NCBI RefSeq assembly: GCF_001194135.2
Contig: NC_069004.1
Span: 1,663,001-1,695,549 of the forward strand
Length of the DNA: 32,549 bases
DNA from: Octopus bimaculoides
Lineage: Eukaryota
Direction of reading: 5' to 3'
The position numbers were made by a program, and so were the translations under genes. The notes under the pieces are model-generated. The model saw only the letters and a program-made list of their open reading frames with translations. It did not search any database and was not told where the DNA came from. Positions 19,736-32,549 of the stretch are shown here, in pieces. Positions within the stretch are counted from its first letter, which is position 1. Each line of letters opens with the position of its first letter.

Positions 19736-19829
19736 AACGAAAGACCTACATACAAATGAATTAACCGTTTTGATACGTTTTCTGTGTGTGAGTAATAACT
19801 GAACTATTTCGTTGTTTGTTATATTATAG

Positions 19830-20166
19830 TAAGAACCAGACGTCTCCAGATCCAGATACGCATAAAGTACCGACAAGGTTTTGGAATAATATCCTACCCC
19901 AGTCGTTAACGCCAAAGTCTTTCGGTAAAGGTTACAACAACTTTACAAGTTTTATGCCATCCAGCTATCCTGCATTCCCATACAAAGACGGACAACATGC
20001 GCATATATTGCGATCTACATCAGATGCCAGTCAGTCAGACCAATCAGTTTCATCTTGTGGCAACCAGTTAAGTGAACGATCTCCTCCGAATACACCAAGT
20101 AAATCCCGTTCGCCACAAGATGGCGCCCCGTTCGCTTTTACAATAGTCAATAACTTGGCTACATAA
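19830..20166 (+). CDS. Same gene, terminal exon (cytoplasmic tail)
   Basis: atattatag acceptor, phase 2 matches the TM exon (AC+T = Thr). KNQTSPDPDTHKVPTRFWNN...GAPFAFTIVNNLAT-stop, Ser/Pro-rich. Confidence 0.8.
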
Positions 20167-22952: not shown

Positions 22953-23053
22953 TTAGTCAAACCAATGTTCTCCCAAGCACTCAGTTGACCATTTTTTTCC
23001 ACAGACCCAGCACCATTCTGCTTCACATTTACAAATCATGTGGTTACAACCAC
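22953..23053 (-). CDS. PRKN: Parkin-like, terminal coding exon (RING2/Rcat)
   Basis: ttttaatag acceptor, phase 1. [33 protein letters not shown]-stop (TAA); ends in the Parkin-type HWFD. Confidence 0.93.
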
Positions 23054-23584: not shown

Positions 23585-23678
23585 CACTTTTCTCAACATT
23601 GACTTCACATTTTGGACACTTCTTAGAGATTTTATGAATCAAGGTAGCTGACTGTTGTGCCAATTGGTGATCTGGATA
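23585..23678 (-). CDS. PRKN: Parkin-like, exon equivalent to PRKN exon 11 (REP and start of RING2)
   Basis: ttctgcag acceptor, gtaagt donor, 94 nt, phase 0 to 1. YPDHQLAQQSATLIHKISKKCPKCEVNVEKS vs human ...[26 protein letters not shown]. Confidence 0.92.
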
Positions 23679-24080: not shown

Positions 24081-24440
24081 TTAGGTTGGCAACTAAGTTC
24101 CCGCGGTTTTTTTTTAATTTAAATTTTTTTTAAAGTTTAATAAAAAATAACAACTAATTAATCAATAATGTATTCGCCCTTGTTGTTTACAACTTTTTCC
24201 CATCGTTCAACAATATTTTCAATACCTCGTTGCTAGAAATCACCCGATTTCGACTCGAAAAAATTGATCCAACCAAGCTCTCAATTCTGCATCAGTATTG
24301 AACGAAACTCTGTGCATAGCATTTGAAAGAGATCGAAAGAGGTGGAAACCCATTGGTGCCAAATCGGGAGAGTACAGCAGGTGTGGCAGCACTTCCCAGC
24401 CATGCATTTGAATAGCTTCCTTGGTCATATTGGTTTCGCA
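24081..24440 (-). mobile_element. 5'-truncated mariner with intact 3' TIR, in the Parkin-like intron
   Basis: TKEAIQMHGWEVLPHLLYSPDLAPMGFHLFRSLSNAM...ELRAWLDQFF, then a frameshifted RGIENIVERWEKVVNNKGEYII. TA at 24079-24080 followed by TIR ttaggttggcaactaagttcccgcgg. Confidence 0.92.
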
Positions 24441-24495
24441 CTCACATAAGAAATCTGTCACAAACCTGAAATAGTTAGCAAATAAATACTCTTAC

Positions 24496-24573
24496 CAGGT
24501 CGCTTCCTTCAACTGGTTCTCGGCCACATGGTCCATTATGTGCCTCATTGGAACACTGACGGCAGAACTTGTG
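24496..24573 (-). CDS. PRKN: Parkin-like, exon equivalent to PRKN exon 10 (IBR second half)
   Basis: cctacag acceptor, gtaaga donor, 78 nt, phase 0 to 0. HKFCRQCSNEAHNGPCGREPVEGSDL vs human FAFCRECKEAYHEGEC. Confidence 0.9.
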
Positions 24574-25103: not shown

Positions 25104-25238
25104 CTGACAGCGGTAACAGGTAATATCAGTGACATTTAGATCAGCCTCGAAACACTCTTTGCAATGAGGGTTCGGGCAGTAGACTGAATAAGTATTTTGA
25201 AGATAAGCCCTTGTTGCCTGGCTCTGGTATTCTTCATA
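25104..25238 (-). CDS. PRKN: Parkin-like, exon equivalent to PRKN exon 9 (IBR first half)
   Basis: tttacag acceptor, gtgagt donor, 135 nt, phase 0 to 0. YEEYQSQATRAYLQNTYSVYCPNPHCKECFEADLNVTDITCYRCQ; IBR Cys spacing kept. Confidence 0.9.
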
Positions 25239-26369: not shown

Positions 26370-26431
26370 CTTGACGTCTCCAAGAATTCGAAAATGGTGA
26401 GCTTCCTGGATGAAGGAGTGGTCACAGTGAG
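26370..26431 (-). CDS. PRKN: Parkin-like, exon equivalent to PRKN exon 8 (end of RING1)
   Basis: ttcttcag acceptor, gtaaat donor, 62 nt (same length as human exon 8), phase 1 to 0. HCDHSFIQEAHHFRILGDVK vs human [20 protein letters not shown]. Confidence 0.92.
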
Positions 26432-26479
26432 CTGAAGAAGGATTTGAAAGAGAATGGAATAAGATGAAGTAGCAAGTAA

Positions 26480-26590
26480 TGGTGGCGGCGGCGGCGGTGC
26501 TAATGAAGGTGGTGGTGGTGGTGGTGGTGGTGGTGGTGGTGATGTAGATAGTGGTGGGGTGTGCTGTAGGTGACGGTGGTAGTGGTGGTT
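26480..26590. repeat. (GGT)/(GGC)n tract upstream of the Parkin-like exon 8 acceptor
   Basis: Read directly; gives a spurious poly-Pro ORF. Confidence 0.9.
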
Positions 26591-26705
26591 GAGAATAACA
26601 GGAGGGGTGGTCATGACTAGAACGTCTTTGACCAGATCACAGGCCATACATGGAGGAGATTAGATGTTAATATAGATTGAAATTATTTTTTTATTTATCT
26701 ATTTA

Positions 26706-27508: not shown

Positions 27509-27683
27509 NNNNNNNNNNNNNNNNNNNNNNNNNNNNNNNNNNNNNNNNNNNNNNNNNNNNNNNNNNNNNNNNNNNNNNNNNNNNNNNNNNNNNNNNNNNN
27601 NNNNNNNNNNNNNNNNNNNNNNNNNNNNNNNNNNNNNNNNNNNNNNNNNNNNNNNNNNNNNNNNNNNNNNNNNNNNNNNNNNN
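27509..27683. other. Assembly gap (175 N), candidate location of the missing RING1 exon
   Basis: N run. Other gaps: 1684-1693, 2429-2869, 3551-3935, 4378-4387, 8910-9550, 14519-14758, 15367-15763, 20232-20754, 28225-28262. Confidence 0.6.
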
Positions 27684-29508: not shown

Positions 29509-29615
29509 AAGTCTCCTTCGCAGGTTATGCAGGAATAATGTTGAGAATTATTAAAGATGTGTTTCAATAAAACTGAATTTTTCTTTGGATGTTTACGGCA
29601 GTAAAATTCATATTT
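29509..29615 (-). CDS. PRKN: Parkin-like RBR E3 ligase, exon equivalent to human PRKN exon 6 (end of RING0, start of RING1)
   Basis: ttctag acceptor, gtaagt donor, 107 nt, phase 0 to 2. Translates KYEFYCRKHPKKNSVLLKHIFNNSQHYSCITCEGD, aligning with human EFFFKCGAH...ITCITCTDVR; CITC retained. Confidence 0.85.
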
Positions 29616-32245: not shown

Positions 32246-32549
32246 TGTCATCATTTAATATTCATGTCCATATAGTTACAGAATATAACAGGAAAAGCAC
32301 AAAAGACTGGAAATTTATTCCTGGTTTATTAGGTACCGGGGTTTCAAATACGATGACACAACTTTGATAAGAACAGAATGATGTTGAATTCCTCTCTCTA
32401 TGTAGCATTTTAATCAATCAACTATGGGAGCAATTAGATTGTACATAAGTTTGCATTGCAGCATTTTGAGGAATGCTGTCCTGCTTGAAACATATATACC
32501 CGATAACTCATGAATATATCTTCGCTTTTTCGAGATTTTCCTATATATA

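What the first reader, a model, noticed from the sequence alone, without database searches (positions are those of the whole stretch)
29595..29615. Phospho-Ubl pocket lysine (human K211) replaced by Tyr
Seen: KYEFYCRKH vs human EFFFKCGAH, so the residue just before the conserved Zn-ligand Cys is Tyr. Known: K211, with K161 and R163, binds phospho-Ser65 Ubl during PINK1-dependent activation, and K211N blocks that activation. The phospho-ubiquitin site residues H302 and R305 (HHFRILG) and Y312 are retained. Inference: the protein may still bind phospho-ubiquitin but not use the phospho-Ubl release step.
Basis: partly seen in the sequence, partly recalled or inferred. Interest (0 to 1): 0.7.

Follow-up and report, generated by a model that had tools for sequence, protein, structure and literature searches.

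The report
Octopus Parkin lacks phosphoserine-pocket lysines
The octopus copy of the Parkinson's-disease ubiquitin ligase Parkin really has a tyrosine where almost all other animals sampled keep the lysine/arginine that docks the phosphorylated Ubl domain; it has also lost a second pocket lysine and the tryptophan of an inhibitory latch, so cephalopods seem to have re-tuned how this enzyme is switched on.

Summary
Confirmed. Window 29615..29509 (minus strand) is the exon-6-equivalent of the Octopus bimaculoides PRKN gene. Codon TAC at 29603..29601 sits at human K211. MAFFT and HMMER-vs-PDB alignments agree.

- **Not an error:** the Tyr is also present in O. sinensis and O. vulgaris.
- **Not a general mollusc trait:** seven gastropod or bivalve Parkins have K/R. 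So do 58 of 64 aligned sequences with C212 in place. The other cephalopods have His (Sepia) or Gln (an unidentified relative of Sepia).
- **Upstream exons, recovered outside the window:** a Ubl with Ser65 is retained, K161 is Gln, and R163 is kept. Only one of the three basic pocket residues survives.
- **Otherwise intact:** the pUb site (H302, R305, Y312), all Zn ligands and the catalytic Cys/His/Glu are intact. dN/dS is about 0.2.
- **REP latch:** Trp403 is Leu. In human Parkin, W403A rescues K161N and K211N.

Best reading (inferred): pSer65 docking on RING0 is weakened and offset by a looser autoinhibitory lock. The rival is that Arg163 plus Tyr-OH still bind phosphate. Only biochemistry can decide between them. 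This is a new variant of a known kind, of moderate interest.

The parts
29509..29615 (-). PRKN exon equivalent to human exon 6: the last RING0 strand and zinc knuckle (YEFYCRKH) plus the first two RING1 Zn ligands (CITC).
   Evidence: AG/GT splice sites and translation. tblastn to human 207-241. 100% match to O. bimaculoides XP_014779687.1 residues 169-204.
29601..29603 (-). TAC = Tyr at the position of human K211 (residue 173 of P0002; residue 191 of O. vulgaris Parkin).
   Evidence: The same Tyr is in O. sinensis and O. vulgaris.
27509..27683 (.). Assembly gap (175 N) that hides the exon-7 equivalent (N-terminal half of RING1).
   Evidence: O. sinensis L002 5470-5614 aligns to window 27833-27689, and L002 5890-5941 aligns to 27508-27457. 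The O. sinensis exon lies at L002 5693-5824, between these two matches. No RING1 C-x-H-x2-C-x2-C motif is found anywhere in the window.
26370..26431 (-). Exon-8 equivalent: (A)HCDHSFIQEAHHFRILGDVK. H302 is at 26399..26397 and R305 at 26390..26388 (phospho-ubiquitin site).
   Evidence: Identical to XP_014779677.1 (P0088).
25104..25238 (-). Exon-9 equivalent: Y312 (25238..25236), the pUb-binding helix, and the first half of the IBR.
24496..24573 (-). Exon-10 equivalent: second half of the IBR (HKFCRQCSNEAHNGPCGREPVEGSDL).
23585..23678 (-). Exon-11 equivalent: REP helix and linker (YPDHQLAQQSATLIHKISKKCPKCEVNVEKS). The Leu codon at 23663..23661 occupies the human W403 position.
   Evidence: An ungapped alignment anchored on C418, I411 and S407 puts the Leu at position -15, where human and 28 other lineages have Trp. 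A helix is predicted there in the AF2 model.
22953..23053 (-). Last exon: RING2/Rcat ([33 protein letters not shown]). The catalytic Cys (human C431) is at 23048..23046. The stop codon is included.
   Evidence: C431, H433, E444, W462 and F463 are conserved.

Best explanation
**What it is.** The feature is a genuine, fixed, cephalopod-specific change in the single-copy Parkin (PRKN) orthologue of Octopus bimaculoides.

**What is shown.**
- Tyr replaces K211 and Gln replaces K161. Of the three basic residues that receive phospho-Ser65 of the Ubl (or of a second phospho-ubiquitin) on RING0, only R163 remains.
- The rest of the enzyme is intact and under purifying selection. This covers the Ubl with Ser65 and its Ile44/Gly47/Val70 surface, the RING1 phospho-ubiquitin site (H302, R305, Y312), every Zn ligand and the catalytic Cys/His/Glu.

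**What is inferred.**
- Electrostatic capture of pSer65 by RING0 displaces RING2 in mammals. In Octopus this step is strongly weakened.
- The loss is tolerated because the autoinhibitory lock has been loosened in parallel. The REP anchor Trp403 is Leu, and Trp183 in the RING0 groove is Arg.
- PINK1 input would then act mainly in two ways. One is phospho-ubiquitin binding to RING1. The other is phosphorylation-driven release of the Ubl from RING1.
- At most a low-affinity Arg163/Tyr-OH contact would remain on RING0.
- In short, it is a re-tuned switch rather than a dead one.

The confidence given applies to the inferred mechanism. The descriptive part (identity, alignment, lineage distribution) I hold at above 0.95.
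For: **Identity and coordinates:**

**Column assignment:** MAFFT and HMMER vs rat and human Parkin chains agree on Y=K211, Q=K161, R=R163 and S=S65.

**Rarity:**
- K/R at 211 in 58 of 64 aligned sequences.
- K161 in 61 of 64.
- R163 in 62 of 64.
- Seven non-cephalopod molluscs all have K/R at 211.

**Cephalopod pattern:**
- Octopus x3: Q/R/Y.
- Sepia esculenta and S. pharaonis: K/R/H.
- Unidentified Sepia relative P0004: K/W/Q.
- These lineages form one clade and share W183R.
- That is 5 non-K/R cells out of 9, against about 3 of about 180 elsewhere. This signals relaxed constraint on the pocket.

**Functional gene:**
- dN/dS is 0.20 over 188 codons against O. sinensis.
- All splice sites are canonical.
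- Octopus deviates at 8 of 86 class-conserved columns. None of these is a Zn ligand or catalytic residue, and three are K161, W183 and W403. K211 is not among the 86 because gene-model artefacts in other sequences lower its score.

**Fold and domains:**
- Pfam finds zf-RING_12, zf-RING_14 and IBR.
- The AF2 model has a beta-grasp Ubl and RING0 at block-mean pLDDT of about 70-91.
- Foldseek top hits are all Parkin.

**Literature:**
- The pocket is K161/R163/K211 plus a hydrophobic groove (PMC9284454).
- K211N blocks RING2 release and activity (PMC9194792; PMC11368401).
- K161N and K211N are rescued by W403A or F146A (PMC10027901; PMC11412986).

**REP co-occurrence:**
- All three lineages with a non-basic residue at 161 or 163 lack W403: Octopus has L, P0004 has S, and the tardigrade with K161L has E.
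- By my manual reading of the alignment, allowing 1-2-residue shifts of the RW motif, only 3 of about 28 pocket-intact lineages lack the Trp.
- Fisher p is 0.004-0.015, with no phylogenetic correction.
Against: - No biochemistry exists, and pocket geometry could not be measured because the tools return no coordinates.
- Ser65 and the Ubl docking surface are fully conserved. That is what one expects if pUbl still docks somewhere.
- R163, L162, I164, P180 and Y/F208 of the docking groove are retained.
- Tyr is conserved in three Octopus species while 5 of its 11 nearest neighbours differ between species. This hints at constraint on the Tyr itself.
- Sepia keeps W403 and a K/R/His pocket, so loss of docking is not a shared cephalopod state.
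- Leu is a milder change than the W403A studied in humans.
- W403 is also missing in three lineages with intact pockets.
- The presence of PINK1 in Octopus was not tested.
- Cephalopod Parkin is fast-evolving overall (long branches), so some changes may be drift.
Confidence: 0.5

Rival explanations
1. The pocket still works. Arg163, the Tyr211 hydroxyl, the Gln161 amide and nearby Lys165/Lys214 still bind pSer65 of the Ubl. Octopus Parkin therefore uses the canonical two-step PINK1 activation, perhaps with lower affinity.
For: - Ser65, I44, G47 and V70 of the Ubl, and R163, L162, I164 and P180 of RING0, are conserved.
- Tyr is invariant in three Octopus species although adjacent residues vary.
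- Sepia's K/R/His pocket resembles the K151/H302/R305 pUb pocket, so the cephalopod ancestor probably kept a working site.
- Lys165 lies on the same strand face as R163 in the AF2 secondary structure.
- Arg+Tyr phosphate sites are known in other phospho-readers such as 14-3-3 and the Pin1 WW domain. This is from my own knowledge and was not tested here.
Against: - In human Parkin the single changes K211N or K161N abolish pUbl/pUb binding and activity (PMC9194792, PMC10027901). Octopus carries both positions neutral.
- Position 211 is Y, H or Q in three cephalopod lineages, and 161 and 163 each change once. That looks like relaxed rather than redirected constraint.
- O. sinensis and O. vulgaris have acidic residues at 207 and 209 next to the Tyr, and Leu rather than Arg at 213.
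Confidence: 0.3
2. The change is neutral or degenerative drift. Cephalopod Parkin is fast-evolving and its PINK1 regulation is decaying or irrelevant. The pocket, REP and W183 changes are then unconnected losses with no compensatory logic.
For: - The cephalopod branches are long in the NJ tree.
- The Ubl scores below the Pfam ubiquitin threshold (19.7 bits against a cut-off of 25.4).
- One cephalopod transcript (P0004) encodes a Ubl-less ORF.
- R305 is His in Sepia and P0004.
Against: - dN/dS is 0.20.
- All Zn ligands, the catalytic triad, H302, Y312 and Ser65 are conserved.
- The changes are concentrated in regulatory contacts rather than spread at random.
Confidence: 0.12
3. RNA editing restores the charge. 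Coleoid A-to-I recoding would convert Gln161 (CAG) to Arg in Octopus, His211 (CAT) to Arg in Sepia and Gln211 (CAA) to Arg in P0004. The genomic sequence would then understate the pocket.
For: All three codons are one A-to-G change from Arg. Coleoids recode extensively (PMC8382921).
Against: - Octopus Tyr211 (TAC) would edit to Cys, not to a basic residue, and P0004 Trp163 has no A.
- None of the 10 sequences in the Sepia cluster (nine transcript-derived, one genome annotation) has Arg at 211.
- No Parkin entry is in the editing supplement that could be searched.
Confidence: 0.04
4. It is an artefact: a sequencing or assembly error, a pseudogene or paralogue, or a misalignment by one residue.
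For: The window has 10 N gaps. The gene is annotated as two fragments, and exon 7 is missing.
Against: - Three independent Octopus assemblies give the same Tyr.
- Two alignment methods agree, anchored by the adjacent invariant C212/H215 and C238/C241.
- Reading frames, splice sites and the purifying-selection signal are intact.
- No second Parkin-like Octopus protein appeared in either database search.
- The missing exon falls exactly in a gap.
Confidence: 0.02

Closest known systems
Human and rat Parkin (PRKN; e.g. PDB 5C1Z, 4ZYN, 6GLC)
   Same: The architecture is the same: Ubl, RING0, RING1, IBR, REP, RING2. All Zn ligands, catalytic C431/H433/E444, pUb-site H302/R305/Y312, Ser65, R163 and F463 are shared. 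There is about 32% identity, and the Foldseek top hits have E-values of 1e-30 to 1e-20.
   Different: K211 is Tyr, K161 is Gln, K151 is Tyr, W183 is Arg and W403 is Leu. The Ubl-RING0 linker is short (about 20 aa) with no recognisable ACT element. The RING2 loop is 3 residues shorter.
Human Parkinson's-disease mutants K211N and K161N, and their intragenic suppressors W403A and F146A
   Same: The same two pocket positions are neutralised. The same REP anchor position is changed in the same protein. The literature shows W403A restores activity to K161N and K211N (PMC10027901, PMC11412986).
   Different: The natural residues are Tyr and Gln rather than Asn, and Leu rather than Ala. They are fixed in a lineage under purifying selection rather than being disease or engineered alleles. 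Their functional effect in Octopus is untested.
Decapodiform cephalopod Parkins (Sepia esculenta P0057, Acanthosepion pharaonis CAE1319314.1, unidentified transcript P0004)
   Same: They fall in the same clade and share the derived 'EP[KR]CRED' motif (W183R). Lys/Arg at 211 is lost in all of them.
   Different: Sepia has His211 with K161, R163 and W403 retained, but F463 is Leu. P0004 has Gln211, Trp163 and Ser403, with F463 as Leu and an ORF without a Ubl.
Gastropod and bivalve Parkins (Patella, Gigantopelta, Lymnaea, Elysia, Plakobranchus, Dreissena)
   Same: Same phylum, same domain set, and 31-35% identity to Octopus Parkin.
   Different: All keep K161, R163 and K/R211, and W183. All those with the region present keep W403.
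Tardigrade (Hypsibius exemplaris) Parkin OWA50968.1
   Same: This is an independent case of a neutralised pocket residue (K161 is Leu) together with loss of the REP Trp (W403 is Glu).
   Different: K211 and R163 are retained. The lineage is unrelated.

Membership tests
Parkin (PRKN) orthologue, RBR E3 ligase | RING1-IBR-RING2(Rcat) module with a catalytic Cys and a full set of Zn ligands | tested here: met
   Pfam finds zf-RING_14, IBR, IBR_1 and IBR_2 above cut-off. C431, H433 and E444 and every Zn-ligand column are conserved. The N-terminal half of RING1 is not visible in the window because of the gap, but it is present in O. sinensis and O. vulgaris.
Parkin (PRKN) orthologue, RBR E3 ligase | Parkin-specific RING0/UPD domain preceding RING1 | tested here: met
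   PF17976 zf-RING_12 scores 51.4 bits against a cut-off of 25 for P0002. The PDB hits are exclusively Parkin until E~1e-5. AF2 block-mean pLDDT is 70-89 over RING0.
Parkin (PRKN) orthologue, RBR E3 ligase | N-terminal ubiquitin-like domain with Ser/Thr65 | tested here: met
   The Pfam ubiquitin hit is sub-threshold (19.7 bits against 25.4). HMMER aligns residues 50-83 to the rat and human Ubl with Ser at position 65. AF2 predicts a beta-beta-alpha-beta-beta grasp fold with block-mean pLDDT of 73-91. These exons lie outside the window (L001 10001-14663).
Parkin (PRKN) orthologue, RBR E3 ligase | Orthology: closest relatives are Parkins, and the locus is single | tested here: met
   All significant database hits are Parkins. 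The sequence falls in a cephalopod clade within the Parkin tree. No second Octopus locus was found.
Canonical PINK1-activated Parkin switch (mammalian/insect type) | Phospho-ubiquitin site on RING1 (H302, R305, Y312, small residue at 320) | tested here: met
   H, R, Y and Thr at these columns. K151 is Tyr, but K151 is variable in other animals.
Canonical PINK1-activated Parkin switch (mammalian/insect type) | Tribasic pSer65 pocket on RING0 (K161, R163, K211) | tested here: not met
   Gln, Arg and Tyr in three Octopus species. K/R is found at these positions in 91-97% of all aligned sequences, cephalopods included.
Canonical PINK1-activated Parkin switch (mammalian/insect type) | REP helix anchored by Trp403 on RING1 | tested here: not met
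   A helix is predicted, but the anchor position is Leu and there is no Trp within +/-5 residues.
Canonical PINK1-activated Parkin switch (mammalian/insect type) | PINK1 kinase present in the same genome, and pSer65-dependent RING2 release | not tested
   PINK1 is not in the window. The word-indexed protein search proved too insensitive for a cross-phylum PINK1 query: the P0004 query returned no vertebrate Parkin. Confirming RING2 release needs biochemistry.

The most novel reading that the evidence does not exclude
Cephalopods may make the Parkin activation pocket conditional through A-to-I RNA editing. The genomic Gln161 (CAG) of Octopus, His211 (CAT) of Sepia and Gln211 (CAA) of the third lineage are each one inosine away from Arg. 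Edited transcripts, for example in neurons or at particular temperatures, would regain a basic pocket and PINK1/pUbl responsiveness. Unedited transcripts would encode a differently regulated ligase. The evidence does not exclude this for Octopus. For Sepia, the 10 sequences in the cluster show no Arg at consensus level.
Probability: 0.04. Interest if true: 0.85.

Novelty: new variant of a known kind. Interest (0 to 1): 0.5.

Why it matters

A whole animal class carries neutral residues at these positions in a gene that is otherwise intact and under selection. That makes cephalopod Parkin a natural experiment on how much of the switch is dispensable. It also pairs the pocket changes with changes at the very lock residues (W403, F463, W183) that engineered activating mutations and drug-discovery efforts target.

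If Octopus Parkin is active and PINK1-responsive, it shows an evolutionary route to the 'de-repressed' Parkin that small-molecule activators try to mimic. If Arg+Tyr still binds phosphate, it redefines the minimal pocket.

The practical yield is a short list of testable swaps: K161Q, K211Y and W403L in human Parkin, and the reverse changes in Octopus Parkin.

Tried and rejected
1. **Exon 7 and upstream RING0/Ubl exons inside the window.** I tried six-frame ORF lists, a Zn-motif regex and tblastn with O. sinensis and O. bimaculoides proteins. Nothing was found. Exon 7 lies in the N gap, and the upstream exons lie beyond position 32549.
2. **Compensating basic residue at 213.** O. bimaculoides has Arg, P0004 has Arg and Sepia has Lys. 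I rejected this as a general explanation because O. sinensis and O. vulgaris have Leu213.
3. **RNA-editing evidence.** No Parkin entry is in the searchable supplement of PMC8382921. The paper I recalled (PMC5499236) is not held.
4. **Literature on cephalopod Parkin or PINK1.** None was found.
5. **Interdomain arrangement of the AF2 model.** The model superposes better on activated-state and R0RB structures (RMSD 4-9 A) than on autoinhibited full-length Parkin (28-29 A). With pTM at 0.43 the domain packing is not trustworthy, so I drew no conclusion.
6. **P0019 (K211 to Ile, metagenome) as an independent case.** I set it aside because the contig has an in-frame stop 15 codons downstream of the Ile.
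7. **A PINK1 search with the last protein-search slot.** Not attempted. The word-indexed search returned no vertebrate Parkin for a cephalopod Parkin query, so a negative result would have meant nothing.
8. **Pfam scans of other long ORFs in the window.** These gave no hits.

Full report
**1. What is at the coordinates**

Read on the minus strand, window 29615..29595 is AAA TAT GAA TTT TAC TGC CGT, which translates to K-Y-E-F-Y-C-R.
- It opens an exon (29615..29509; AG acceptor, GT donor) encoding KYEFYCRKHPKKNSVLLKHIFNNSQHYSCITCEGD(L).
- tblastn with human Parkin aligns this exon to residues 207-241. My remembered human sequence was checked for K161, R163, K211, S65, H302, R305, Y312 and C431.
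- The same query also finds four more minus-strand exons.
- The window is 100% identical to Octopus bimaculoides chromosome CM046624.1 of GCA_001194135.2.

The exon set with canonical splice sites is listed below.

| Human-exon equivalent | Window coordinates (minus strand) |
|---|---|
| Exon 6 | 29615..29509 |
| Exon 8 | 26431..26370 |
| Exon 9 | 25238..25104 |
| Exon 10 | 24573..24496 |
| Exon 11 | 23678..23585 |
| Exon 12, with stop codon | 23053..22953 |

- The spliced exons 8-12 reproduce the annotated fragment XP_014779677.1 exactly.
- Exon 6 is the end of the annotated fragment XP_014779687.1.

**2. The missing exon**

No RING1 N-terminal exon is present in the window. O. sinensis has it at L002 5693-5824.
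- The sequence just before it (L002 5470-5614) matches window 27833-27689.
- The sequence just after it (L002 5890-5941) matches window 27508-27457.
- The exon therefore falls in the 175-N assembly gap at 27509-27683.
- This gap explains why the gene is annotated as two half-proteins in O. bimaculoides.

**3. Is the Tyr really at K211?**

- HMMER against all PDB chains aligns 'akyefYCrkhp' with 'aeffFKCgahp' of rat 4ZYN and human 5C1Z.
- The same alignment puts 'iasaQlRikc' against 'vqpgKlRvqc'.
- MAFFT over about 70 Parkins gives the same columns, anchored by the invariant Zn ligands C212/H215 and C166/C169.
- The Tyr codon is TAC at 29603..29601.
- The same Tyr is in O. sinensis (XP_029656806.2) and in full-length O. 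vulgaris Parkin (CAI9739973.1, 422 aa). It is therefore not an assembly error.

**4.

The upstream exons lie outside the window, at locus L001 10001-18362. They encode the following (AF2).
- A divergent but recognisable Ubl, predicted as a beta-grasp fold with block-mean pLDDT of 73-91.
- The Ser65 equivalent (Ser76 of P0002).
- The Ile44, Gly47 and Val70 surface residues.
- In RING0, K161 is Gln (CAG) and R163 is Arg.
- Q165 is Lys, K151 is Tyr and W183 is Arg.

Two of the three basic pocket residues are therefore neutral.

**5. How unusual is it?**

An exhaustive profile-free search of 1.84 billion representative proteins with the Octopus N-terminal half gave 53 hits. A second search seeded with a cephalopod sequence added named molluscs, cnidarians, an echinoderm and a mite.

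| Position | Basic residue count |
|---|---|
| 211 (sequences with C212 in place) | 49 K + 9 R of 64 |
| 161 | K in 61 of 64 |
| 163 | R in 62 of 64 |

- All seven non-cephalopod mollusc sequences have K or R at 211. These are Gigantopelta, Patella caerulea and P. vulgata, Dreissena, Plakobranchus, Lymnaea and Elysia.
- The exceptions at 211 are cephalopods, one intron read-through (P0035), and one metagenome contig with Ile that carries an in-frame stop and was set aside.

**6. The cephalopod pattern**

- P0057 occurs verbatim in a Sepia esculenta RNA-seq run. SRR20545814 is identified through PMC9538352.
- P0057 clusters with Acanthosepion pharaonis PARK2.
- All 10 sequences in that cluster have K161, R163 and His211 (CAT).
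- P0004 is an unidentified transcript from SRR27666080. It is 70% identical to Sepia and its sister in an NJ tree.
- P0004 has K161, Trp163 and Gln211 (CAA). Its ORF lacks a Ubl, with an in-frame stop upstream.
- All cephalopods share the derived EP[KR]CRED motif (W183R), which is absent from 63 other sequences.
- Five of the nine pocket cells in three cephalopod lineages are not K/R, against about three of about 180 elsewhere.
- The codons allow single-step paths: AAR (K) to CAA (Q) to CAT (H) to TAC (Y).
- This is the signature of a constraint relaxed at the base of the coleoids.

**7. The rest of the enzyme is intact**

- dN/dS between O. bimaculoides and O. sinensis is 0.20 over 188 codons, and 0.34 for the exon with the Tyr.
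- Of 86 columns conserved by class in at least 93% of non-cephalopod Parkins, Octopus deviates at eight.
- No Zn ligand or catalytic residue is among those eight. Three of them (K161, W183, W403) are regulatory contacts.
- K211 is a fourth regulatory change. It misses the 86-column list only because truncated gene models in other sequences lower its score.
- Pfam finds the Parkin RING0 and RING1 families and the IBR.
- The AF2 model's best structural matches are all Parkin, with E-values of 1e-30 to 1e-19.

**8. The latch**

I used an ungapped alignment anchored on C418, with I411 and S407 as internal checks.
- The REP anchor Trp403 is Leu in Octopus (window 23663..23661).
- It is Ser in P0004 and Trp in Sepia.
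- The tardigrade Parkin is the only other lineage with a neutral K161 (Leu), and it has Glu there.
- By my reading of the alignment, which allows the RW motif to sit one or two residues off, only three of about 28 pocket-intact lineages lack the Trp.
- Fisher p is 0.004-0.015. This is uncorrected for phylogeny and is therefore only suggestive.
- Sepia and P0004 instead have F463 as Leu at the RING0:RING2 interface.

**9. What is known experimentally**

- Binding of pUbl or pUb to RING0 is 'principally mediated' by pSer65 in the K161/R163/K211 pocket. Ile44, Val70 and Gly47 contact a hydrophobic groove (PMC9284454).
- K211N abolishes that binding, RING2 release, auto-ubiquitination and mitophagy (PMC9194792; PMC11368401).
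- K161N and K211N are rescued in cis by W403A or F146A (PMC10027901; PMC11412986).
- W183 lines the RING0 groove used by the ACT element and by activator compounds.

**10. Interpretation**

Shown:
- The substitution is real, fixed in Octopus and confined to cephalopods.
- It is accompanied by K161Q and W403L.
- It sits in a gene that is otherwise conserved and under purifying selection.

Inferred:
- The electrostatic pSer65-RING0 docking is much weaker than in mammals.
- It is tolerated because the autoinhibitory lock is weaker, mirroring the human suppressor data.
- PINK1 input then acts mainly through the intact RING1 pUb site and through release of the Ubl.

The main rival is that Arg163 plus Tyr-OH and the Gln amide still bind the phosphate. 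Conservation of Ser65, the Ubl surface, R163 and the Tyr itself supports this rival. These tools cannot exclude it, because model coordinates are not returned and there is no biochemistry.

Drift, RNA editing and artefact are less likely, for the reasons given under the rival explanations.

**11. Comparison and novelty**

This is a bona fide Parkin orthologue. It meets all family-defining features but fails two features of the canonical mammalian/insect activation switch: the tribasic pocket and the REP Trp. Four full-text searches found no paper describing this. I rate it a new variant of a known kind and of moderate interest. It is a natural counterpart of the K211N/W403A experiments, but it is so far supported only by sequence.

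Noticed in passing
window 27509-27683: The 175-N assembly gap swallows the RING1 N-terminal exon. As a result O. bimaculoides PRKN is annotated as two separate partial proteins (XP_014779687.1 and XP_014779677.1). The latter carries a spurious intronic N-terminus (MVLDSTAAAATITCYFILFHSLSNPSSA).
   Followed up: yes
window 23661-23663 (minus strand): The REP anchor Trp403 is Leu in Octopus. It is Ser in the unidentified cephalopod transcript P0004 and Glu in a tardigrade Parkin that also lacks K161. It is Trp in Sepia and in nearly all other Parkins.
   Followed up: yes
window 22953-23053 (minus strand): The RING2 loop between the Zn ligands equivalent to C436 and C441 is three residues shorter ([11 protein letters not shown] against human MKCPQPQCRLEWCW). 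The same short C-x-C form is seen in a mite Parkin and in two unnamed Parkins.
   Followed up: partly
L001 16006-16137 and 18273-18362 (outside the window): Further RING0 changes shared by all cephalopods: W183 is Arg within a derived EP[KR]CRED motif, with a 3-residue insertion before it. K151 of the pUb pocket is Tyr in Octopus and Pro in Sepia and P0004.
   Followed up: partly
L003 (SRR27666080 transcript), 1-1106: This cephalopod Parkin transcript encodes an ORF that starts about 20 residues before RING0, has an in-frame stop upstream and has no Ubl. It may be an alternative 5' exon or an unspliced or partial cDNA. The contig begins with Illumina adapter sequence.
   Followed up: partly
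P0057, P0004, P0078 (Sepia and relative): Decapodiform Parkins have F463 as Leu (RING0:RING2 interface), V164 as Thr (RING0 groove) and R305 as His. P0004 also has R275 as His. One Sepia transcript variant (P0080) differs by His to Arg ten residues upstream of position 211. This is an A>G change that could be a SNP or RNA editing.
   Followed up: no
window 24243-24491 (minus strand): An ORF in the intron between exons 10 and 11 reads ...LPHLLYSPDLAPMGFHLFRSLSNAM..., which looks by eye like a mariner/Tc1 transposase remnant. It has no Pfam hit at E<=0.01.
   Followed up: partly
window ~26450-26660: (CAC)n/(GCC)n microsatellite directly upstream of exon 8. It reads as poly-Pro, poly-Thr or poly-His in the three frames. 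(CA)n and (TA)n tracts are frequent throughout the window, which has 10 N runs totalling 2860 bases.
   Followed up: no
window 19792-20163 (plus strand): This ORF corresponds to the 3' end of a convergent neighbouring gene (a 360-aa product in the L001 gene calls). It is Ser/Pro-rich and has no Pfam domain.
   Followed up: partly
L004 (JGI metagenome 3300032739), 1448-2839: An arthropod-like Parkin on a 4.2-kb metagenome contig has Ile at K211 but retains K161, R163 and W403. The reading frame carries an in-frame stop 15 codons downstream of the Ile, so it may be a pseudogene or an erroneous sequence.
   Followed up: partly
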